A stretch of DNA of 64,000 nucleotides from Lepidodermella squamata (GCA_047495785.1 JBLDXI010000017.1:2852001-2916000), one strand, 5' to 3'; shown: positions 7,825 to 52,666, numbered from the stretch's first letter. Translations and numbers: made by a program. The notes: a model not told the origin generated them from the sequence alone.

Positions 7825-8005
7825 AGCTAACTTATTTTTTTCGGTGATGATGTTTTTGTCTTTTCGCTAATCATTTGAGGCTTGTCAGGTTTTATAATAT
7901 TTTACTGAAAGTCTCAGCTTTGTTATAGAAAATGAATGTAACCTAACTTGTTTTCAAATGTTGTTATTTAGGTTTATATTTAAGGTTTGTATTTAACTGT
8001 TGAAA

Positions 8006-10177
8006 ATGGTCGCTTCCAAGCCATCCAAGGCCGAGAACCAGGAACGTAGGGGCACTGAGATCCGCTACAGCAACATGACCGCTGTGAAAGCCGTATCCGA
8101 TGCCATCCGCACCAGCTTGGGCCCTCGCGGTATGGACAAGATGATCAAGTCCGGATCTGGTGAAGTCACCATCACCAATGACGGTGCGACGATCTTGAAG
8201 GAAATGAAGGTCCACCACCCTGCCGCGAAAATGATGGTCGAGCTGGCGAAGGCGCAAGACATTGAAGCTGGAGACGGTACCACCACCGTCGTCGTCATCG
8301 CCGGCAGCCTTCTTGACCAGGCTGCCAAGTTGCTGGAGAAGGGTCTCCACCCTAGCATAATCTCGGACGCTTTTGGCCGTGCTGCTCAGGAGTGCATCAG
8401 GATTCTCGACACGATGAGCGTTCCCCTGAAGCTGACAGACCGCGAATCGTTGATCAAGTCCGCCTCCACCGCTCTCAACTCTAAGGTAGTGTCTCAGTAT
8501 TCGCAGATTCTCGCACCGTTGTGCGTCGAGGCCATCCTCAAGGTCATCGACATGAACGCAACCAACGTTGATCTTCGCAACATCAAAATCATCCAGAAAC
8601 TGGGTGGCACCGTCGAAGACACTGAATTGGTCGATGGTCTGGTCTTCAGCCAGAAGTTGAACACGCCCGAAATGCCGACCCGTGTCGAGAAGGCGAAGAT
8701 TGGTCTCATCCAGTTCTGCATCTCACCGCCAAAGACTGACATGGAGAACAAGGTCATCATCCAAGACTACGCCCAGATGGACCGTGCCCTGAAGGACGAG
8801 CGTAACTACATCTTGAACATTGTCAAGCACATCAAGAAGACCGGTTGCTCGGTTCTGTTGATTCAGAAGTCGATCCTCCGCGATGCCACCAACGATTTGG
8901 CCCTGCATTTCTTGGCCAAGTCGAAGATCATGGTCATTCATGACGTTGAGCGTGATGACATTGAATTCGTTTGCAAGGTCACCGGCTGCCGCCCCGCTGC
9001 TAGCTTGGACCATTTCACTCCGGAGATTCTCGGCACGGCTGACCTGGTCGAGGAGATCCCGACCCCGTCCGGCAAGATCGTCAAGGTCACCGGCGTGCCA
9101 AACCCTGGAAAAGGTGTCTCGATCTTGGTCCGCGGCTCAAACAAGCTGGTCATCGACGAGGCTGACCGTTCGATCCACGACGCCCTGTGCGTCATCCGCT
9201 GCTTGGTCAAGAAGCGTGCGCTGATTGCTGGAGGCGGTGCCCCTGAGATCGAAATGGCCCTGCGTCTGCAGCAGAAGTCGCACACGCTCGCTTCGGGTAT
9301 GGAGCAATATTGCTGGAGAGCTTTCGCCGACGCCCTTGAGGTTGTGCCATACACGCTGGCTGAGAACGCCGGCTTGAATGCCATTGAGACCGTCACCGAG
9401 CTGCGCAATCGCCATGCTGCTGGCGAGAAGACTGCTGGTATCAACGTTCGCAAGGTAAATTGGACAAAAATGAATTATATTTACATATTCAACCCGTTAA
9501 TTGACGTGATGCTAATGGTTACCTATATCAATTGAGCCTCTAGTTACTCTTGCCAGTGGGTAAACGAATTAGGCCAACCACTCTTAAGCTATACTTCCAG
9601 CCTCCTTAACCGCCACATTTGACAATCTTCTTTGGCGATGTTCGGTGGAATTATATAACGAAACGGTCTGGCTAGTTTCGCTTCCTAATCCTTCATTTTT
9701 GATCATTATGACGCGGAAGATTTTTGTCCCGTAATGAGGGTAGTTTGGAGAACCAGAGAGATGGGTTAGGAAGAGGATATTAGGAAATGTAAGAAGAATA
9801 CCATGCGGCCACAATTCTAAATGGAGGAAATTCCCATCCGGTCTTACTCATTTTTTTCAATAGTCCCTACAGGATACTGAAAAATTGATCATGAATTCTC
9901 ATTCAATTTCCGAGTAGAGAAGCTTTTATTATTCCTAATATTGCTAGCTGAAAATAGATAGGCGTCCCAAATTTTGAGGAATGAAAAAATCGGAAATTTA
10001 TTTATGCCTATATTTTAATCTTTTTTCTTTTATTATCAGAGCGCCATTACCAACATTTTGGACGAGAACGTTATTCAGCCGCTGTTGGTTTCCCAATCGG
10101 CGATTAATCTTGCGACGGAGACGATTCGCTCGATTCTGAAGATCGACGACGTGGTCAACGCTGCCCACCGTGTTTAA
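8006..10177 (+). CDS. CCT4: T-complex protein 1 subunit delta (CCT4)
   Basis: Exons 8006-9454 and 10040-10177; chaperonin motifs [25 protein letters not shown]; delta-type [17 protein letters not shown]; ends ILKIDDVVN. Confidence 0.96.
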
Positions 10178-39428: not shown

Positions 39429-42400
39429 ATGAAGACCATCCGATGTATACCTTGCAAAATCTGCGCAGCTCCATCAACTGGATTTCACTATGGAGGTAAG
39501 AGCAACAAATAAATTGGGTTCATTATTGATTTTCTGAATAATTTCGATTTTATCCAGCTCTCACCTGTGAGGCTTGCAAGGTGAGTGACACTACTAGGTC
39601 GACATACCATTTATTTTATTTTCTAATTTGTTGTCCATCAAACAGGCGTTTTTTCGACGGGTTCTGAAGTCAGGCAGTGGTGCTTCATCGCTATCATGCC
39701 TGGAGGAGATGTCACCACAAGGTGGCAGCGCCCCAAGTGACGGTGGTGAAGCGAGACCGTCCTCACCCGGCGCTGCTTCGCCGTTCTCGAACGCGGCGAA
39801 CGCGTCGACGTCAACTAATGGCGCCTCTCCGCCGAATCTCGCTCAGACCTCGTCTCTAAGCGACGTTCCTGGAGCTTCGAAGTCATCGGCGGATGACGGT
39901 GACAAAATTACCGTCGTTTGTGATCTCATTAACACGTCTAAAAAATGCCCAAAGTGCCGCTTCAATCGCTGTCTTCTCATCGGAATGTCACCTGACGGTA
40001 CGAAATTTTCTCTATCGGGATTTTCCTTCTAGGCTACATTTTGTGCGAGATAAATTGTGAAAAATTGGTCGATTTCGTCGAATTTATATTTTCTAAATTT
40101 TAAGGTGGCAGATTTATATTCGGCCGATAATTTAATCACCTAATTATTTTTATTTCTAGCTTCGAAAATCGGTCGCCCAACCAAGGGTCGCATTCAACAG
40201 TTCCGGGACGAATTGTGCCGGGCTGGCAATGACCCAGAAGTGCCTTCGACAAAAGATGAGGCTGACCTAGATAGTGACGATGAAACTGCGCTTGAATCTG
40301 AATTTACCCGACGGCCCTCCTCCTCAAGATCCACGTCAAAGTCTGCCGATGTGACACCGATTAAGCGGGGCCGTAAGGCGACTTACCCAAGTGTTAAGCA
40401 AGAAGCAGTCGAACCGAAGCAAAATCAACGGCGGAATAGCGAAAAGAAGCCGAAAAAGGAGAAAGCTTCGTCTCAGGTCGCTACCGTTCAGCCACTGCCT
40501 CAGAAATCGCCATTCGATGGTAGACCATTTAGTCACCATGACGACAGTTTAATCAGCTTCCCGGAACCTCAACCTGGCGAGGAAGATCTACTGATTCTCG
40601 GTGCGAATGTGGCTGATGTTTTCGACCCACTGGCGTTTTCTGATAATTCGGTCTCCGATCTTTTGGTTGACGCCCCGCCCTCTATCCCTGTGTGTAACGA
40701 AGTTGCGGGTCCTCAACACCAAAACGCTGCCGCAAGAGTGCCACCTTTTGACTATCGAACATCCAGCCTCGACCCATCGTCAGCAATCGACTCGGCGATT
40801 CGGCGGTTCTACGCAACTACTGACCGCAAACATGACAGGCGTGATTTCATCCGACTCTTGCGGCACTTGTCGCTGTTGTGTAAAAAGTCGGACGTTGTCT
40901 GGGTGTACGGCTCGGCGTCTCGTTGGATTAACATGGCTCAACTTGGTCCTAACGAAGCGCTGCCTTTCGACGAAGACCCGCTTGAAATCTACTCGAAATA
41001 CCTCGCTGAAACGCCGCTGTTCATCAGCCCGTCCGCATCATCGCCCCACGCTGTCGAAATGGAGAACATCATTCGAAATGTCGTACAATCTACCCGGTAT
41101 CTCATGCGGATGAACACCGTAAGTTCGATGTCCAATTGACCTCATTCATCCCTAAGCCCTTAATTGCTGTCGATTTCGAGAAAATCGTGGGGTCGCGTCA
41201 TCTCATGATGGCGGAGGACATGTCATTACGGTTTTGAATTATGAAATTCGAGTCGCCCATTTTTAAGAAATAACAGTCCGGTGTTACGTCTCTATATTGA
41301 GAATTTCCCATGTCTAGTTTCAGGCTCAGCTGCCTGCACTACCTGAAAAGGTCTTCAATAATTAATGTTTCGTCTCCACTTTATTTTGCGATGCGAAAGA
41401 ACTGCGCCTGAATGAATTATTCTATGCTGACTCTGCTATCTGAGCTTCTAGTTGAAATTTTTAGTTGGAGCTGTGAACGAGGACGGTCGCTGAACCCCTT
41501 TGAATTTTCGATTATATCTGCTCTCTTATTTCTTAGAATGACGGCAAAGTTGCTGAACAAATTAATATTTTTCTTTCCTTTTACAGTTACCTCGTGATAG
41601 TGGGAAGGCTGAAGTTGCGCGTGCCGACTCGTTTATAACATTTTGGCAAGAGTTTATGCAAATTCTGGAAACTCAGTTCATCAACATGATAATTTTCACG
41701 CGAAACCTGCCCGGATTCGCGAGTATAACCAATCTTTCCGATCGAGTCGCGCTATCGGCAAACTCCTTCTACCCCCTCGTTCTCGCCACCCTCTCACTCG
41801 ACTTTGACGTTGCCACCGAGTCGGCTCGGACATTTTGGATGAGTAACGAGACTCTGAAACTAGTGATGACGACTTTTCCTGAAGTCAAAGCCCACTACAC
41901 CGTAAGTTTTAGGTTTTGTAGTCAAATTTCATAATCGAATGACGTGTTTCTACAGGCTTTCAATCAGCATTTTGTTGACGGCGGCTATGCCATAAAATCA
42001 GCGAATCTCACAGTTGTGGAATTCGGATTCCTGTGTGGTTTGATATTTTTCAACCCTAGTATACCCGGTTTGAAAGACCGAGCTACCGTGTCGCAAATAG
42101 CAACTCATCTGCAACTCAGCGCCGAAGCGTTCATTCGCAGCAATTTCGGCGACCGGACCTTGCCGCTTGCAAGCAACGCTAGAACAGGCCCGGGTGACGC
42201 TACGGAGCAGCGGATAACCGCAATGAACCAGCTGGTCAGCTTTTTCAAGAGCGCAAGTGCCAGCTATTCATCGATGATGGCTGAGTTTGTTCAGACGATC
42301 CCTGGCGTTGTCATGCGGTCGGGTGAAATTTTTCGAGAAATGTGCACCCAGTTGCTGTCTCGAAACGGGTCGTCGTCAGGCAAAGCCTCGAAGGTGATGA

Positions 42401-42444
42401 GCGGCGACTGCAATTTGAACGGTTCTACCCTTGAGCTGTCGTAG
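39429..42444 (+). CDS. Divergent nuclear receptor NR-1 (NR1-like; P-box CEACKA; 73-aa D-box insertion)
   Basis: Exons 39429-39495, 39558-39580, 39646-39997, 40160-41118, 41586-41901, 41956-42444. DBD CKIC..GFHYGALTCEACKAFFRR..C-x73-C-x8-CPKCRFNRC, then ASKIGRPTK; LBD FTRNLPGF..DR, LTVVEFGFLCGLIFFNP, AF-2-like IFREM. Confidence 0.88.
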
Positions 42445-43165
42445 CGAATCCCCCTCATGCTTTGTTTTTACGGCGCCGTTTTGCGAGATCTTTCTCGCCC
42501 GTGATAAGATATATGTAATTGTTAACAAGTCGTGCATTTTTCTACTCAATGTTCTGTCATTTTTTTGTGTTTGTTGTTTCACCGGGCGAGTATAGAATTG
42601 CGTTTTTCTCACTCGCAGTAAGTCTACGCGGATGATGACAATACTTGCTGTTTTCCAGCTTAAAAAATATTTGGTTTTTTCTCTATCGTGTAAATACCTA
42701 CAACATGTATTTGACGTACTCTTTCATGAGGAAAATATGATCACCTACAGCCGAACAATACTTCATCTGTTACAGTTACTCTCAGTCAATTCGAGTACGT
42801 CTTGCGAATTAACGGGTACGCTTTTTTTCGCACGAGAAACTCGTTACATCACCCACCAAATGATGACGATGTGTTTCATTCACTGGCTATAATGTGAAAC
42901 GCCACGGTGTAGAAAACCTGTTACTCTTATATATATGATATTTGTCTTATACTACATCTAATGATATAACTGTCTTTATTTTTTTGACAACTATTTTCTT
43001 GCGGAAAAGAAAAATGGAGCGATATCAATTTAATTTCTAATCATGCATTTTTGTTTTATATTTCTAGGATTTCTTAATATTTTGCAGTATGCTGCGAGGT
43101 ACTGGCATGCAATTTTTTTAATAATCTAATAGAGCTACCGAGAAAAGCACTTGAATTCTGTAGCT

Positions 43166-45936
43166 ATGGAAGGTGTGCGTTTTATTCCATGCAAAATTTG
43201 TTCAGCCCCCTCAACCGGTTTGTTTTACTGATTCATCGCTCGCCGTTTGTTTTGACCCATTGTCTTATCTCCAGGTTTCCACTTCGGTGCGCTGACATGC
43301 GAAGCGTGCAAAGTAAATATCAGCTAATTATTGATAAACATAATCAGGCTATTGAACTTTACTAGGCGTTTTTCCGGCGAGTTCTCAAATCTGGAGCCAC
43401 CCTTCAGACCCTTACGTGCAGTGGAACTGACCCATCGCCTGTTGACCAACCATCGGCGCAACCGAATGGCGAGGCTGCGGTAGTTGTCGACGGCGCTGAG
43501 GCACCTCAGGAGCATACTAACGGCGAATCCTCCTCGCAGCCTGCTGCCGATCAGCCACAGGGACAAACACAGCGCCGATGTGATCTGGCGTTCAGCCCGA
43601 AGAAATGCCCAAAATGTCGCTATCAGCGGTGCTTAGAGATAGGAATGGGCCCATCAGGTAAGAAACAATTTGAGATTTAACACAATTGAGCCTAAAAATC
43701 GTTTTTTAACAGCTTCGAAAATCGGCCGGCCAACAAAAGGACGGGTAGCTGAGGTTCGCGAGGAACTTCATCGTATTAAGCCTTGGCTAGACTTCAAGCA
43801 GGGTCAGCCCGGGTCTAGGAAGGAGGACGGCGTCAGCAGCAGCAGCGGTGACCTGGCTGCCTCCGAGGCGCGATCGGCATCGTTGCTCATGCTGGCGAAC
43901 AAAGAATCGCGAAAGCGGTCGGCGTTTTACGGCGATAACGCCGCTAAAAAGCGCCACCCCTCGATGCCGTCGAGCGTGTACTACGGCGGGGCGGCTGGTT
44001 CGATATCCGCGACCACCGCCGGGCTGCAAGCCGCCGCCTATGCCGCGCACGTGCGCCATTTCTCCGGCGATGTGATCGACTCGAAATTCCGGCCCTACCT
44101 CGGCCTCGACCCAGAATTCGACGACGCCGACGAAGACGACGACTGCGACGTTGACGACGACTTCAACCCGATTCAGGACAACAAATTCATGCGTAGCAGT
44201 AACGAGCCGTTGAATCTGCTGCAGCGCCGCCCTGTCGGCTCCGATTACAACCCGCCGAACCCGGTTCTTAACCACAATACTGCTGCTTCTTCGCGGAATG
44301 ACGGCGCTGGTGCGAGTAACGCGACGGGGTCTGGCGGTTCCAGCCAACAGCCCCCTGCCACTGCAATTCTCACCGTCATTCAGCAGTACAACGCAAGTGG
44401 CGGCAACCGGCAGCGTTTCGTTCAGAATCTGCGCGAGTTAGGCGCGGATCGGGAGGGGTCTAGCCTCGCCTGGCTCTACCAAGCCGCTGACCACTGGTTC
44501 GACATTGCGAACGTGATGTTCCAGTCGCCTCTTGCCATTTCAAACATTTTGTCCACCGCACAGGCCGCGGCCGGCCTGCCATCGTCCCCGCCACAGACCC
44601 AGCGACCGCCGTCGGTCTCCGACAACAGCGAATCGCTGAAGCTTCTATCTCAGTTTGCCGTCGCGTCGATGCCACCCCGGCCGGCAGCCCCGCCACCCCA
44701 GACCGCCGCTCCTCCCGTGCCAACCGCATCTATGTTATCACCGTTCCCCCAAATCCCCCCGCCATCAAACGGCTCAGCCACGACGGCATCGCCCCTCCTC
44801 GCCTCGAGCGCGTTCTCGCCATGGCCGCAAGCCCTTCGGTCGGAGACCATGGCCCGGCAAGTCGTGCAGGCGACGAAGCACCTCGCCAGTCTGAACTTGA
44901 GCCGGCAAGGCTTGCGGCCGGGTTCGCTCAACTTGTCAGCGCCCGACCTCTGGGGCTTTCTAATGCAAAATTTCGAAGCCAACACGTCGCACATCATCAG
45001 TTTCGCACGAAGCATTCCTGGCTACAGTTTGATCACCTCGGCGCCCGACCGCGCCATTCTATCGATGAACTCATTTTTCCCACTGCTCTTCGCCAACATG
45101 TCCATTGAATTCGACCCGGTTTCAGAAAACATTCGCCTATATTGGATGGGAAGTGGGGAGAACGATGACGCACTTGCTTGCGCCCGGTCCATCTTAAAAT
45201 CCCCGCAAGATTCGGTAAGCAGGCCTTTATTTAGTCTTTGATTGGATAATTTTTTTGTTTTTTCTAGGCTGCTGAAAATGGCTCGATGAAGACGTCGAAC
45301 CTGACTGTCGTCGAGTTTGGCTTCATGTGTGCGCTGGTTCACTTCAACCCGGGTATCCGGGGCCTGCACGACCCGATCAGTGTTGAAATGGTCGCGTCGG
45401 AGCTGACGAGCGCCGCTGAGTACTTCATTAATACCAACTTCCCGTCGAACAACGCTGCCGCCGCCGTGCGAGTGGCTTTCCCCGCCGCTTTCTTGCCGTC
45501 CGGTGCCAACGGCGCCGCAACCCCGTCGCCCGCCGCCGCGCGCCTCGCCGAGCTCAACCGTCTGGTCGCGTATTTCCGCAACCTGAACGCGACCAACAAC
45601 TGGATCTCGACCGAAATGGACTCGGCTGCGCACCAGCAGGCGATTCAAAACGCCGCCAACTCCGCCGCCGCGTCAACGTCGGTTGGAAACTCATCGGCGC
45701 AGGACCAGCCGCCTGGCCAAAACGATGACGCGTCGGTTCGCGAGATGTATCGCAAAATGTTTGATTTGATCAAAACCAGCAGCACGACGAATGGCCAACA
45801 AGCGGAGCCGACAACGCTGAACTCGTCCACGTCATCGTCAGCATCGTCAGCGGGCAATACTCCATTCATGCACTTCTTACCTCGATTTGCGGAGAACTCT
45901 TCCGTGCCGCAAGCTAGCCCTTTCCAACATCATTAA
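43166..45936 (+). CDS. Divergent nuclear receptor NR-2 (P-box CEACKA; 53-aa D-box insertion)
   Basis: Exons approx. 43166-43217, 43275-43312, 43366-43657, 43713-45214, 45268-45936. DBD CKIC..GFHFGALTCEACKAFFRR..C-x53-C-x8-CPKCRYQRC, ASKIGRPTK; LBD FARSIPGY..DR, LTVVEFGFMCALVHFNPGIRGL. Confidence 0.88.
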
Positions 45937-48428: not shown

Positions 48429-51400
48429 ATGGACATCCGCTGCGCACCATGCGAAGTCTGCGGTTCGGCCTCTTCAGGTATAATGAAGTTACAATCTTCC
48501 GTAACAATTTCAAACTCGAATAATTGCAGGATTTCACTTTGGAGTGCTGGCCTGTGAAGGCTGTAAAGGATTCTACCGACGGGCGGTTAAATTCAACCTC
48601 GCCGAGTCTTACAAGTGCCTGACTGGGCAAAACGATTGCGAGGTTTCGATAAAATCCCGAAAATGTCAAAAATGCCGGTATACAAAGTGCGTTGAGGCCG
48701 GTATGGCGCCGGAGGCCTCCCGCACCGGTCGCCCGACAAAGGTGAGACAGGCTGAAATAAAGCAGCAACTCGATAAGCTGCGAGAAGAGAACAAATTGTT
48801 GCCAGCCCCGGCAACGTTGCCTCCCCACCTATTGCAGCAGCAGCGGGAGAAACAGGAGAGGCAGGCGAATAAAATCGCGAAAAAAATAGCCAAGGCCCAA
48901 AAATCAAAGGCGGGTGCGATAACGGTCGGCGACCGGAAATCTAGCTCTGGCGGTCCCGATGTCGACCAGCCATCGACATCAGCCCTAGATTTCATCGACG
49001 TTGACAGCCAGTCGACGAGTATCACTAATGAGCCATCAGTTGCTGATCTATCTACCCGGTCACCCGCCTCTCGGATGCATCACTACTCCGGTGGTTTGGC
49101 TGATCGACCCGTCAGTGGGCTATCAGCCCCGGATTACGACGCTGTGCCGAAAATTCCAGCATTTACCATGCCGTCGACTAGCAGCGCTATCAATTTGGTG
49201 AACCCATTCAGCAATCACAACGCAGCGACTTCATCATTCTCCCGGCCTGAAGATATACCCGGGCCCTCGAAACCGCCAGAGGCTGGTCAAAAGGAGCAGG
49301 AAAGGCCGCAACATGATTCTCAGCATGCAAGCGGCGCTTTGGCCACAATTTTGTTGTCCCAGTCCGATGCATCGGGCCTGCGGGAGTTCGTAACCCCGGC
49401 TCGCGATTTGACCAGCCTCAGTTTGGACCAATTGACCAAAATTGTTCAGGAGGATGCAAGATCTGGCAATGCCATGTTTTGGTTGTATAATTCCGGGCGC
49501 GAGTGGTTCAACGCCGATTTGGCCAAACTTTTCGGCTGCCCGCCCTTGGAAGACCCGTTCGCCCTTTACAGGCGATACGTCCTACCAATGCAAACCGCAA
49601 ATCCATCACCCATGTCCCTGACTGTGCCAGTGGCAGACCCGCACCCGATGAGCTTCTTACCCTCCCTGGTTTCAGCCCGAACTGAGTGGCTGATTCAACG
49701 GATAGTGAAAAGCGCGGCGTATTTGTCGAAGATTCAATCGACCCGCACGATTCTCACCGACCGCAATCTCGAGTTGACCGACGTGTGGCGGCGGCTGTTG
49801 AGCGGTTTCGAACTGAACGCAGTTCATATGATTAATTTTATCAAATCGCTGCCCGGTTTCACGCATATTGATTTGCACGATCGCATTCTGCTGACAACGC
49901 ATGCGATGATGCCGCTGCTGTACGCGCAGTTGTCGCTCGACTTTGACCCGAATACGGAGACTGTCAACTTTTTCTCCATGTCGCGCGAGACCGCTGAACT
50001 CGTTCTATCCACCTACGCCGGCCCTGACAAGCTTCTGTACCTAGACGTGAGTTTTTGCTCTATTTACGTATTTTATGCTAAATGAATCACACGATGGCTT
50101 ATAGAAGGTGCTAGAAATTAGCCAAAACATCTTGTCACGATTTTAGCTTATTCATACGTCTTACCATATAAAGCATTCTAGAGATAAAAATTTACTGGAA
50201 GAGGATAAATTTAATATGATAATTATGTTACAACCCCTGACAAAAATTTTGAATTTAATTTTCAACTGCCACCTACCATAGCAATGGATCATCGATACAA
50301 GGCTAGAATCGCGGGCATCTGTCAATTAATCAAAATCACTTTCGTTGTCCCAATTTTAAATGGTTTAATTAATCAAAGTTCATAGAGAGATAAACTTCAA
50401 TATAAATCAAAGCTGAATGAAACGCAGCCAAAATCGATCATTTGAAATTCAGCTAACTGAAATCGAATCCGAAAACCTACCGCACAGGTGGCATGCGATT
50501 CGGCGTACTGTCAATTCTCTCTCAGTATAGGGTATCCTATTAGCGAAACCAAATTTGCCTGTTGCGGAACCTAATTTTAGATAAGCTGAAAGGTCGCTAT
50601 TCGAATATTTCTACGAAACCAAGGAAATGAATTGTATGGTGGAGAATGCGTCTCATACAGATTTTTACGCTGAATTTAAAGATGATTTATTAAAACTATG
50701 CCGATCAATCTTGACATCTTTGAAAGTTTGGAAAGTTTCGAGTGGTTTAGGCCCAGTGAAAATTCTAAAATTTGGTTTCGCTAAAAGGGGTGTATATTGT
50801 TTTGTCAGCTAATTCCTTGTTCCGTCAGCTAATTCCTGTTTTTGTCAGAAGTATCTTTTTCTGACAGCAATGACTCTTTTTGACAGCAGAACTACTATTT
50901 ATCAGCTAATTTTAAATAAAATTAAAATTATCTAAAATGTTAAACGTCTACTGCGAACTGCTGGGTAATATCGCGAAAAATTCCAATTAGAGGTCATTGC
51001 CGTAATCGCCCTGCTTCGGCAATGTCCGGCCGCCAAGTCAGCCGATTTTTTCCTTAGTCTTACCGTAGTAATTACCGTAGTTTCATCTTTTAACATTAAG
51101 TGCTCATTTTTCGCAAAAAATGAAAGTAGGAAAATATTAGCAAGAAGGGAAAATTTGGCTTGATTGCCTGTAACTACTCGAACTCCCTCTCTACTACCCC
51201 CACACCCATCACTCTACAGAATAACAAGGAATTGCCACGCTTCTATCGTCGTGTCAAACTCTTGTCGAAACCCCCAGGATGAAAACTTGCCAGTCTTGTA
51301 TACCGCCTTTTTCTAACCCTCTAACCCTGACTAGTTCGCTGCCCAAGAGATTCATATTTGTGCTGTTATGTCGCGTCGAAAGTGCCAAAAGTGCGGGTTC

Positions 51401-52666
51401 AACAGATTTTTGACTGATTTTGCGCGCGTACTATTCGTTGAAACTGGCAATGGATTCATTCCAACCCGAATATTGAAATTATTAGAAAAATTTATAATTC
51501 GCATTTATATGATCTTGGGTAGCGATATATGGTTAGAAACTCAATTAAAATTAAACTAGCTGGTAAATTGCAGTTCTGCTGTCAAAAAGAGTCATTGCTG
51601 TCAGAAAACGATGCTTCTGACAAAAACAGGAATTAGCTGACAAAACGCAAAAATTAGCTGACGAAACTAGATTAACTCGCTAAAAGTAAGACCCTTATAA
51701 ATTTCGATATTAAAACTAATAAATTCTTAGAAAATTCTTAGAAAGATAATTTTTGAAAAATCTGTATTCCAATAACGTTGTATTTGGGAAGATTTACTTA
51801 TGGACAAAATTACTTCGATGCTTAAATTTTGAAGTTTTGCGTCTGTTTTGAACCTGTTTTATCAATTTTCGAAATCTTAACTTTTCACGCCTAGTTTTTG
51901 ATAGCAAGGTGCAAGGTTATTAACTGGGTTTATTTTATTTCAGACATTCCGGCGGCATTTCGTGGATGCTGGCTATGCAATTAAGAGCTCGTCTCTCACC
52001 GTCGTAGAGTTCGGCCTGTTGTGCGCCCTGATCTTCTTCAACACGAGCATACCCGGTCTGAAAGACGTGACCAAAGTTGAAACTGTACGCCTGGAACTCA
52101 GCCACGCCGCCGAGGCGTTCGTCTACGGCAACTTCGGCAACGAAGCGCTCGATGCAAGCCCGTCGAAGCCGGACAGCCCCCCATCGCCCGTTCAAGACAA
52201 CTCGCCCCTGGCCGCTGCGTTCGGGGCAGCCGGCGCGTCGGCCTCGAACTGGCCGCCGAATATGAACATGTCGACGGCGTCGAACCGGATCAGCAATTTC
52301 CGGTCACTCGTGTCGTACTTTCGCAATTTGAACCTGTTCGCGTCGTGGCTGCGCGGGCTCACCCTGCAGGTGCACCCGTACCTGGTCGAGTGCTCCGGGC
52401 AGGTTTTCCGTGAAATGCACACGCAAATGGAGCACAACCTGCGGCAACACGCCATGATGGATGAAGCTAATAAAATGAAAGGCGTAGCTGCGTCGAGCAG
52501 CGAGACCTTACTCGACCACGAGTCAATGCCATCGACCAGCAGCCGGCCCCCGCCGCTGGTATCGTCCCCGCCGCCCAGCAACATCCCGCCCGGTTACCAC
52601 CACATCCCGAGTCGGTTGTCGACGAAACCGGGCGACCAGCCCCCATCTTGGGCTCACAAACATTGA
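48429..52666 (+). CDS. Divergent nuclear receptor NR-3 (NR1-like; P-box CEGCKG; near-normal D-box)
   Basis: Exons 48429-48477, 48530-50046, 51944-52666. DBD CEVC..GFHFGVLACEGCKGFYRR..CLTGQNDC..CQKCRYTKC, ASRTGRPTK; LBD FIKSLPGFTHIDLHDRILL, LTVVEFGLLCALIFFN, VFREM. Confidence 0.9.
50788..51678. mobile_element. Non-autonomous DNA transposon (MITE-like), ~145-bp TIRs, in NR-3 last intron
   Basis: 50788-~50935 is the reverse complement of ~51533-51678, with a near-identical core (GTCAGCTAATTCCTGTTTTTGTCAGAAG..CTGACAGCAATGACTCTTTTTGACAGCAGAACT) and internal GTCAGCTAATT repeats. Flanked by the direct repeat GCTAAAAG (50780-50787 and 51679-51686). No transposase ORF. Confidence 0.85.
51285..51412 (+). 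pseudogene. Decayed nuclear-receptor DNA-binding-domain fragment inside the TIR element
   Basis: Reads TCQSC/(frameshift)AFF*.../RCPRDSY/(frameshift)CAVMSRRKCQKCGFNRFL, i.e. P-box, D-box and distal finger-2 cysteines in the correct order, with stops and frameshifts. Confidence 0.5.

What the first reader, a model, noticed from the sequence alone, without database searches (positions are those of the whole stretch)
39646..43657. Two nuclear receptors with giant disordered insertions inside zinc finger 2 (D-box)
Seen: between Cys5 and Cys6 of the DBD, NR-1 has 73 codons (39700-39918, Ser/Pro/Ala/Gly-rich) and NR-2 has 53 codons (43420-43578, Gln/Pro/Glu-rich). Both are stop-free, GC-rich like neighbouring exons, and show no obvious similarity to each other. 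All 8 zinc ligands are retained. Paralog NR-3 has 6 residues here. Established: the D-box is about 5 aa in nearly all NRs and forms the DBD dimer interface that sets half-site spacing. Inference: a lineage-specific NR subfamily that lost D-box dimerisation and binds as a monomer, or uses the loop as a regulatory or interaction segment. These proteins have almost no A/B domain (4-8 aa before Cys1), so the loop might substitute for it.
Basis: partly seen in the sequence, partly recalled or inferred. Interest (0 to 1): 0.85.

Follow-up and report, generated by a model that had tools for sequence, protein, structure and literature searches.

The report
Nuclear receptors with giant D-box loops
Two neighbouring hormone-receptor-type genes of a small invertebrate carry a 53-73 residue floppy, acidic loop between two zinc-holding cysteines of their DNA-binding domain. 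The loop is kept in a distant relative and, for one gene, in spliced RNA, at a spot that is five residues long in nearly all receptors.

Summary
NR-1 (39429-42444) has 73 codons (39700-39918) and NR-2 (43166-45936) has 53 codons (43420-43578) between Cys5 and Cys6 of the DNA-binding domain. All eight zinc cysteines are kept. The paralog NR-3 has six residues there.

- **Exon, not intron.** The segments are 61% G+C against 26-42% for introns. In one RNA-like run, a contig spliced at a confirmed NR-1 intron reads straight through the NR-1 segment.
- **Conserved position.** A second species, with saturated synonymous sites, keeps the same three genes in order. It has open, in-frame loops of 59 and 71 residues at the same place. 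The flanking DBD is 81-94% identical, but the loops are hardly alignable.
- **Single origin.** A DBD tree puts NR-1 and NR-2 together (support 99), so the loop probably arose once.
- **Family.** The DBD and LBD are closest to Rev-erb (NR1D). A Grip-box-like GRPTK tail is kept.
- **Rarity.** Among 231 DBDs of the 150 nearest relatives, the longest D-box is 16 residues.
- **Function.** The loops are acidic, Ser/Pro/Gln-rich and almost free of aromatic residues, so probably disordered.

I conclude that these are real receptors whose D-box dimer surface has been replaced by a disordered loop. Monomeric binding and a regulatory role for the loop are inferred, not shown. NR-2 splicing was not resolved. 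I found no published description.

The parts
39429..42444 (+). NR-1 gene, 734 aa. Exons: 39429-39495, 39558-39580, 39646-39997, 40160-41118, 41587-41901, 41956-42444.
   Evidence: The model gives a clean ORF. All five introns appear as GT..AG skipping joints in contigs of run X1.
39700..39918 (+). NR-1 D-box loop: 73 codons between Cys5 (39697-39699) and Cys6 (39919-39921). It is Ser/Ala/Pro/Gly-rich, has net charge -5 and carries four SP/TP motifs.
   Evidence: X1 record 1 runs without a break over 39678-39996 and is then spliced to 40159-40462.
43166..45936 (+). NR-2 gene, 850 aa. Exons: 43166-43217, 43275-43312, 43366-43657, 43713-45214, 45268-45936.
   Evidence: The model gives a clean ORF. 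The ortholog in species B is 94% identical in the DBD flanks.
43420..43578 (+). NR-2 D-box loop: 53 codons between Cys5 (43417-43419) and Cys6 (43579-43581). It is Gln/Pro/Ala/Glu-rich with net charge -6. Its end, QPQ..Q.RR-Cys, is conserved in species B.
   Evidence: X1 holds 70% of the sampled words of 43405-43595 at low depth.
48429..52666 (+). NR-3 gene, the paralog with a normal second finger. Exon 1 is 48429-48477, exon 2 is 48530-50049 and the last exon lies within about 51962-52666. Its D-box LTGQND is at 48619-48636.
   Evidence: Pfam zf-C4 E 2.3e-17. The best solved relative is Rev-erb NR1D1.
40171..40185 (+). Grip-box-like GRPTK in the C-terminal extension of the NR-1 DBD. The same motif is in NR-2 (start of exon 4, from 43713) and in NR-3 (about 48724-48738).
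   Evidence: HMMER aligns NR-3 'GRPTK' with 'GRIPK' of Rev-erb. The motif is invariant in all six sequences.
41587..42441 (+). NR-1 ligand-binding domain, exons 5-6, including the helix 3-5 signature FTRNLPGF...DR..L.
   Evidence: A profile of the six paralogs and orthologs hits nuclear-receptor LBDs in the PDB. The best hit is Rev-erb beta at E 4.3e-5.

Best explanation
NR-1 and NR-2 are functional, divergent NR1-type (Rev-erb/ROR-like) nuclear receptors. In their common ancestor the five-to-six residue D-box of the second zinc finger grew into a long, translated, intrinsically disordered, acidic loop.

**Shown**
- The loop is exonic.
- It is retained in spliced NR-1 mRNA.
- It has been kept open and in frame at the same position in both paralogs of two deeply diverged species.
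- Its sequence and length drift freely, while the rest of the DBD is strongly conserved.

**Inferred**
- Cys5 and Cys6 bind the same zinc ion, so the two ends of the loop sit side by side. The finger can therefore still fold with the loop projecting from the face of the domain that normally makes DBD-DBD contacts.
- That contact surface is lost. The receptors would then bind extended half-sites as monomers, or dimerise only through the LBD. They would use the recognition helix (P-box EACKA) and the retained Grip-box-like GRPTK tail, as Rev-erb, ROR and ERR do.
- The loop itself most likely acts through bulk properties: negative charge next to a very basic DBD, and proline-directed phosphorylation sites in NR-1. 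This would tune or gate DNA binding or recruit partners, rather than work through a fixed motif.
For: - **Anatomy.** Coordinates, frames and G+C were checked directly.
- **NR-1 transcripts.** Run X1 shows GT..AG joints at all five NR-1 introns. One 623-nt contig is continuous over 39678-39996 and spliced to 40159.
- **Synteny.** Species B (L001/L002) has NR-1, NR-2 and NR-3 in the same order, with loops of 59 and 71 residues at the same site.
- **Selection.** pS is 0.81-0.86 (saturated). The DBD flanks are 81% and 94% identical; the loops are 28-34% identical. By BLASTP the loops score E 0.015 or show no match.
- **Chance.** All four loops being open and in frame has a shuffled expectation of about 1e-6.
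- **No hidden intron.** No in-frame GT..AG pair gives a D-box shorter than 9-22 residues. Candidate sites look unlike real introns.
- **Single origin.** The NR-1 plus NR-2 clade has support 99, with NR-3 as sister.
- **Family affinity.** The DBD is closest to Rev-erb (PDB 1a6y, E 1.8e-18), then ROR-gamma. The GRPTK motif aligns with GRIPK. The LBD profile is closest to Rev-erb beta.
- **Loop properties.** 64-73% of residues are S/T/P/G/A/Q/N, with 0-1 aromatic residues. Net charge is -2 to -6. There are 4-5 SP/TP motifs in both NR-1 orthologs.
- **Charge contrast.** The loops carry -7 to -11 charges per 100 residues. The hinge carries about -1 to -2 and the rest of the DBD +13 to +15.
- **Indel hot spot.** The D-box varies in this clade (5, 6, 9, 9, 10 and 16 residues in kin). 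The mode is 5 in 178 of 231 DBDs.
Against: - No DNA-binding, zinc-binding or oligomerisation data exist.
- The only structure prediction possible by reference (exon 3 alone, six-sequence alignment) was uninformative: mean pLDDT 48.6, and even the finger was not modelled.
- NR-2 RNA coverage is low (depth 3-8) and shows no interpretable splice joints. Splicing of the NR-2 loop is therefore excluded only indirectly.
- Contigs cannot show rare isoforms.
- The near-neutral sequence drift of the loops fits a merely tolerated expansion just as well as a functional one.
- Only two species could be compared.
Confidence: 0.55

Rival explanations
1. Tolerated junk. Once this receptor lineage no longer needed D-box contacts, low-complexity codon expansion at a structurally permissive loop accumulated without any function. 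The loop is translated but does nothing.
For: - Loop sequences are barely or not alignable between orthologs and between paralogs.
- Lengths differ by 14 and 18 residues between species.
- Relatives show a graded series of D-box lengths, 5 to 16.
- Hinges in the same proteins are also full of low-complexity sequence.
Against: - Four lineages have kept loops of 53-73 residues through saturating divergence. None has collapsed back.
- All four loops are net acidic and more acidic than the hinge.
- SP/TP density is kept in NR-1, and the end of the NR-2 loop is conserved.
- These are weak arguments, because there are only four data points.
Confidence: 0.3
2. The segments, or the NR-2 one at least, are unconventional introns removed from the mature mRNA. 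For NR-2 this would use GT at 43441 and AG at 43571-43572, so the protein would have a short D-box.
For: - An in-frame GT..AG pair exists in NR-2 (43441..43572) and would leave a nine-residue D-box.
- NR-2 RNA contigs are too sparse to show any splice joint, including those of its accepted introns.
Against: - In NR-1 a spliced contig at depth 100 retains the whole loop, and no joint falls inside exon 3.
- The shortest D-box that any in-frame GT..AG pair could leave is 22 residues in NR-1, and 13 in both species B genes.
- The candidate NR-2 intron is 61% G+C and has no pyrimidine tract. Real introns here are 26-42% G+C with T-rich acceptors.
- Its acceptor is not conserved in species B.
- An intron would not stay open and in frame in four lineages.
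- X1 holds 70% of the words of the NR-2 loop.
Confidence: 0.07
3. NR-1 and NR-2 are decaying or non-functional duplicates of NR-3 with a disrupted second finger.
For: - Pfam recognises only half of the domain in each exon 3.
- NR-2 is weakly expressed in the one RNA-like run.
Against: - Both genes have complete ORFs of 734 and 850 aa.
- Both have orthologs in a species with saturated synonymous divergence. The DBD flanks are 81% and 94% identical, and all eight cysteines are kept.
- NR-1 is well expressed and correctly spliced.
- The LBD signature is conserved.
Confidence: 0.03

Closest known systems
Rev-erb / E75 (NR1D) and ROR / HR3 (NR1F) receptors, e.g. the Rev-erb alpha DBD on DNA (PDB 1a6y)
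   Same: - They are the best solved-structure match of the family's DBD (E 1.8e-18; ROR-gamma next) and of its LBD helix 3-5 profile (Rev-erb beta, E 4.3e-5).
- They share the FFRR/FYRR motif after the P-box.
- They have a Grip-box-type GR(I)PK tail. From established knowledge, that tail lets these receptors bind extended half-sites as monomers.
   Different: - Here the D-box is 53-73 residues instead of 5.
- Cys6 to Cys7 spacing is 8 residues, not 9, and the RNxC motif is absent.
- The P-box of NR-1 and NR-2 is EACKA, not EGCKG.
- There is no A/B domain.
- In a DBD tree the three genes and their metagenome kin form their own clade, not nested within the Rev-erb or ROR rows.
Platyhelminth HR96b (SmNR96b, also called Vitellogenic Factor 1)
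   Same: It is a published nuclear receptor with extra sequence inside the DBD. [quoted passage not shown]
   Different: - There the extra sequence lies between the two fingers and comes with extra introns and a changed zinc ligand.
- Here it lies between two ligands of the same zinc ion, within a single exon, and all four cysteines are kept.
- It belongs to a different NR group (NR1J).
Small natural DBD length variants: D-boxes of 6-7 residues in some receptors, and the KCSW four-residue insert of the mineralocorticoid receptor
   Same: These are length changes inside an otherwise intact zf-C4 domain that alter function. The KCSW insert is described in bioRxiv 10.1101/2024.03.14.585051 (listed). 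The D-box length spread among relatives was measured.
   Different: These variants are 1-4 residues. Among the 231 DBDs of the 150 nearest relatives, the maximum D-box is 16 residues. The loops here are three to four times longer and disordered.
Oestrogen-related receptors (ERR, NR3B)
   Same: They have the identical P-box EACKA (stated for ERRs in PMC10497141). From established knowledge, they bind extended half-sites with help from the C-terminal extension.
   Different: The rest of the DBD, its tail and the LBD point to NR1, not NR3. The shared P-box is probably convergent. No ERR sequence was included in my tree.
First DBD of some flatworm-type two-DBD receptors (P0057, P0018)
   Same: They also carry a long low-complexity insertion inside a zf-C4 domain. 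In P0057 about 57 residues lie between Cys4 and Cys5.
   Different: The insertion is in the inter-finger linker, not between ligands of one zinc ion. It is not related to this family.

Membership tests
Nuclear receptor superfamily | zf-C4 DNA-binding domain with two Cys4 zinc modules (eight conserved cysteines, P-box helix, FFRR motif) | tested here: met
   All eight cysteines, the P-box CEACKA and AFFRR are present in NR-1 and NR-2 and in their orthologs. In NR-2, Pfam zf-C4 matches the post-loop part at 25.7 bits, above the 21.1 cut-off. In NR-1 it scores 20.5 bits on exon 3 alone.
Nuclear receptor superfamily | Ligand-binding domain with the helix 3-5 signature | tested here: met
   A profile of six sequences hits many NR LBDs in the PDB, best E 4.3e-5. 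Pfam found nothing on single exons, at E up to 1 for the NR-1 exons and up to 0.001 for NR-2 exon 4.
Nuclear receptor superfamily | Canonical second finger C-X5-C-X9-C-X2-C (five-residue D-box) | tested here: not met
   NR-1 is C-X73-C-X8-C-X2-C and NR-2 is C-X53-C-X8-C-X2-C. The canonical form is stated in PMC10497141.
NR1D (Rev-erb / E75) | Closest sequence relationship of DBD and LBD, and orthology in a tree | tested here: inconclusive
   NR1D gives the best PDB hits for both domains. In the DBD tree, however, the cluster sits in a separate 12-row clade with unnamed metagenome kin (support 82). The tree has few columns and no root.
NR1D (Rev-erb / E75) | Grip-box C-terminal extension (RFGRIPK) | tested here: met
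   GRPTK aligns with GRIPK of Rev-erb. It is invariant in all six sequences. The match is a partial motif only.
NR1D (Rev-erb / E75) | Haem-ligating residues, and absence of helix 12 in vertebrate Rev-erbs | not tested
   No alignment of the C-terminal half of the LBD to Rev-erb was made. An AF-2-like IFREMC / VREMY motif is visible in NR-1 and NR-2, which would argue against the Rev-erb condition.
ERR (NR3B) | P-box EACKA together with an NR3-type DBD and LBD | tested here: not met
   The P-box is identical, but the best DBD and LBD matches are NR1 members, not ERR.

The most novel reading that the evidence does not exclude
The loop is a working regulatory module placed inside the DNA-binding domain. 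It would be an acidic, phosphorylatable disordered segment anchored between two ligands of one zinc ion. It would gate DNA binding by electrostatic self-inhibition or phospho-switching, or carry the receptor's activation function. If so, these would be nuclear receptors with an AF-1-like element embedded in the DBD, obligatorily uncoupled from D-box dimerisation.
Probability: 0.25. Interest if true: 0.75.

Novelty: new variant of a known kind. Interest (0 to 1): 0.58.

Why it matters
The D-box is one of the most length-invariant features of the nuclear-receptor DBD. Textbooks treat it as the surface that sets half-site spacing through DBD dimerisation.

A natural, conserved and transcribed receptor pair with a 53-73 residue disordered loop there shows three things. 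The Cys5-Cys6 position can accept large insertions. Whole receptor lineages can do without D-box contacts. And nature supplies its own comparison: NR-1 and NR-2 with the loop, and the neighbouring paralog NR-3 without it. That comparison could test what the D-box, and a disordered acidic segment next to a DNA-reading helix, contribute to site selection.

It also matters for annotation. Domain models split or miss such DBDs, so similar receptors may be under-counted in genome surveys.

Tried and rejected
- **Structure prediction.** AlphaFold2 on NR-1 exon 3 with the six-sequence alignment gave mean pLDDT 48.6 and pTM 0.13, with nothing folded. It says nothing either way. The full DBD spans three exons and had no reference, so I did not fold it.
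- **Word-index searches.** Protein searches with NR-3 exon 2, NR-2 exon 4 and the finger-2/tail region of P0002 returned only the species B proteins. Low-complexity words probably swamped the first two.
- **JGI metagenome scan.** A scan with the exon 3 alignment found no relative.
- **Exhaustive HMMER search.** The search with NR-3 exon 2 gave 4752 hits. None of the best 150 has a D-box longer than 16 residues. NR-1/NR-2-type proteins from further species were not among them.
- **Internal tandem repeats.** As a trace of the loop's origin I found only one 21-nt repeat, 2.3 copies of a 9-mer at 39788-39808.
- **Taxon identification.** A feature search with a CCT chaperonin gene was uninformative. 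'Probably a rotifer' comes only from other agents' notes and I did not test it.
- **Literature.** Six searches found no paper describing a large insertion between Cys5 and Cys6. Subscription-journal papers on rotifer receptors are not in the library.
- **Rejected readings.** I rejected the intron and pseudogene readings; see the rival explanations.


Full report
**1. What is in the sequence**

The window is eukaryotic, with 52-470 nt AT-rich introns. Three paralogous nuclear-receptor genes lie head to tail on the + strand.

| Gene | Span | Size | Exons |
|---|---|---|---|
| NR-1 | 39429-42444 | 734 aa | 6 |
| NR-2 | 43166-45936 | 850 aa | 5 |
| NR-3 | 48429 to about 52666 | not fully modelled | at least 3 |

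- My gene models give uninterrupted ORFs with GT..AG at every junction.
- In NR-1 and NR-2 the first 30 residues (Cys1-Cys4, P-box CEACKA) lie on exons 1-2. Exon 3 starts with AFFRR.
- Exon 3 carries Cys5, then 73 codons (39700-39918) in NR-1 or 53 codons (43420-43578) in NR-2, then Cys6-X8-Cys7-X2-Cys8 and the helix ending in GM.
- NR-3 has LTGQND, six residues, at this place.
- Only 7-8 residues precede Cys1 in all three genes.

**2. Exon or intron?**

- The loops are 61-62% G+C, like the exons (45-60%) and unlike the introns of these two genes (26-42%).
- They are open only in the reading frame, with 1-5 stops in the other two frames of the same strand.
- Of the two public runs that hold this locus, X1 behaves as RNA. 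Its contigs skip exactly my five NR-1 introns, with GT..AG ends. The DNA-like run X2 does not.
- One X1 contig (623 nt, depth about 100) runs without interruption over 39678-39996. That covers all but the first 22 nt of the loop and everything after it to the exon end. It is then spliced to 40159-40462.
- A second X1 contig joins exons 1, 2 and 3. No joint falls inside exon 3.
- So the NR-1 loop is in mature mRNA. Contigs cannot exclude a rare shorter isoform.
- NR-2 is weakly covered in X1 (depth 3-8, patchy). It shows no usable joints, even at its accepted introns. Contig ends coincide with the exon 3 borders (43366, 43657), and X1 holds 70% of the sampled words of 43405-43595. This evidence is suggestive only.
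- I enumerated every in-frame GT..AG pair inside exon 3. None can shorten the D-box below 22 residues in NR-1.
It would leave nine residues. It has a poor donor, no pyrimidine tract and 61% G+C.

**3. Comparative evidence**

- NR-3 exon 2 and NR-2 exon 4 each retrieved one metagenome protein (P0001, P0002).
- Their contigs (L001 and L002, 97-99.9% identical to each other in aligned blocks) come from one second species.
- That species has the same order NR-1, NR-2, NR-3.
- Its NR-1 and NR-2 carry open, in-frame loops of 59 and 71 residues at the same Cys5-Cys6 position. Its NR-3 has six residues.
- Divergence is deep. Synonymous differences are saturated (pS 0.81-0.86).
- The DBD outside the loop is 81% (NR-1) and 94% (NR-2) identical at the protein level. 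The loops are 28-34% identical in a forced alignment.
- By BLASTP the loops are marginal (E 0.015) or undetectable. The two paralogous loops do not match each other.
- Shuffling gives a joint chance of about 1e-6 that four such segments stay open and in frame.
- In species B the shortest D-box reachable by any in-frame GT..AG pair is 13 residues. The AG before the R(K)R-Cys end of NR-2 is not conserved as a usable site.
- Other introns have been gained or lost between the two species, yet the loop is never bounded by splice sites.
- A maximum-likelihood tree of the DBD, with loop interiors removed, groups the four NR-1/NR-2 sequences with support 99. Orthologs pair, and NR-3 is sister (support 85).
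- The simplest history is one expansion in the NR-1/NR-2 ancestor, before the two species split.

**4. What family is this?**

- The DBD of NR-3 is closest, among solved structures, to Rev-erb alpha (1a6y, E 1.8e-18), then ROR-gamma. HMMER aligns the post-DBD GRPTK with the Grip-box GRIPK.
- A profile of the helix 3-5 region of all six proteins hits nuclear-receptor LBDs, best Rev-erb beta at E 4.3e-5.
- Pfam misses the LBD on single exons. It sees only the post-loop half of the DBD in exon 3 of NR-1 and NR-2.
- The exhaustive search with NR-3 exon 2 found 4752 relatives.
- The nearest are unnamed metagenome proteins. The nearest named ones are two-DBD or NR1-like receptors of a hemichordate and of flukes.
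- In the tree, the three genes and six metagenome proteins form their own clade (support 82).
- Within that clade the D-box is an indel hot spot: 5, 6, 9, 9, 10 and 16 residues, with one member lacking Cys6.
- Across 231 DBDs in the best 150 hits, 178 have five residues and the maximum is 16. The 53-73 residue loops are far outside that range.
- Other agents' notes call this genome 'probably a rotifer' with very large receptor expansions. I did not test that.

**5. Properties of the loops**

- All four are 64-73% Ser/Thr/Pro/Gly/Ala/Gln/Asn.
- They have 0-1 aromatic residues and low hydropathy.
- Net charge is negative, -2 to -6.
- In the window proteins the loops carry -7 and -11 charges per 100 residues. 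The hinge carries about -1 to -2 and the rest of the DBD +13 to +15.
- Both NR-1 orthologs have 4-5 SP/TP motifs.
- Both NR-2 orthologs end the loop with a Gln/Pro-rich stretch and R(K)R before Cys6.
- These are the features of a disordered segment constrained in composition, not sequence.
- The one structure prediction I could make by reference was uninformative.

**6. Mechanism**

*Shown:* a translated loop replaces the D-box in two conserved receptor genes, one of which has direct evidence of expression.

*Inferred from the known architecture of the zf-C4 fold:*
- Cys5 and Cys6 ligate the same zinc ion. A loop of any length can therefore leave and re-enter at nearly the same point without unfolding the finger.
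- The loop emerges where DBD-DBD contacts are normally made, so D-box-mediated cooperative binding is lost.
- The retained Grip-box-like tail and the Rev-erb/ROR-like character of the family make monomeric binding to an extended half-site the most likely mode. LBD-mediated dimerisation is not excluded.
- An acidic, partly phosphorylatable loop tethered next to a basic DNA-binding surface would most plausibly compete with or tune DNA binding, or act as an interaction or activation segment.

The main rival is that the loop is simply tolerated. Its free sequence drift allows that. The persistence of long, acidic loops in four lineages argues mildly against it.

NR-3 lacks both an A/B domain and a loop, and long disordered hinges are present in all three proteins.

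**7. Novelty**

- The canonical second finger is C-X5-C-X9-C-X2-C (PMC10497141).
- The nearest published precedent I found is flatworm HR96b. [quoted passage not shown]
- Small inserts such as KCSW in the mineralocorticoid receptor are also known.
- Six literature searches found no description of a large insertion between Cys5 and Cys6. The library lacks many subscription papers.
- I rate this a new variant of a known kind: a real and unusual structural departure, with function still untested.

Noticed in passing
window 39998-40159, 43658-43712, 43218-43274 versus L002: Intron turnover between the two species. The intron just after the DBD in NR-1 and NR-2, and NR-2 intron 1, are absent from the species B orthologs. 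The intron after the P-box (CK|AFF) is kept in both.
   Followed up: partly
window 40433-41235: In both runs this piece of NR-1 (exon 4 end and start of intron 4) has raised depth. It is bordered by contigs that run off into the same unrelated sequence at both ends. Many substitutions are seen in X1 over 40860-40973. A second, diverged and expressed copy or haplotype of this piece probably exists elsewhere.
   Followed up: no
window 43127: An X1 contig carries 21 unmatched letters immediately upstream of 43127, about 40 nt before the NR-2 start codon. It could be a 5' leader or an upstream exon. The position is not at an obvious AG acceptor.
   Followed up: no
window 50050-51961: NR-3 has a roughly 1.9 kb intron, much longer than its neighbours. 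It holds repeat-like sequence and a short ORF resembling the end of a receptor second finger (about 51370, RKCQKCGFNRF). Another note (s1-391840) calls this a TIR element.
   Followed up: no
NR-1, NR-2, NR-3 second fingers (e.g. window 39919-39960, 43579-43620, 48637-48678) and P0003-P0005, P0015, P0055, P0065: NR-1, NR-2, NR-3 and some of their metagenome kin have eight instead of nine residues between Cys6 and Cys7. In other kin the spacing is 5-7. The conserved R-N-x-C motif is missing throughout. One relative (P0005) has no Cys6 at all.
   Followed up: partly
P0057 and P0018 (first DBD): Two long two-DBD receptors among the hits carry a low-complexity insertion between Cys4 and Cys5 of their first DBD, about 57 residues in P0057. 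This is another site where zf-C4 domains tolerate insertions.
   Followed up: no
window 42445-42895: RNA-run contigs continue about 450 nt past the NR-1 stop codon at high depth. This suggests a long 3' UTR ending roughly 270 nt before the NR-2 start codon.
   Followed up: no
window 8000-9535: There is a nearly intron-free CCT/TCP-1 chaperonin gene. Pfam Cpn60_TCP1 scores E 6e-156, and the feature search calls it the delta subunit.
   Followed up: no
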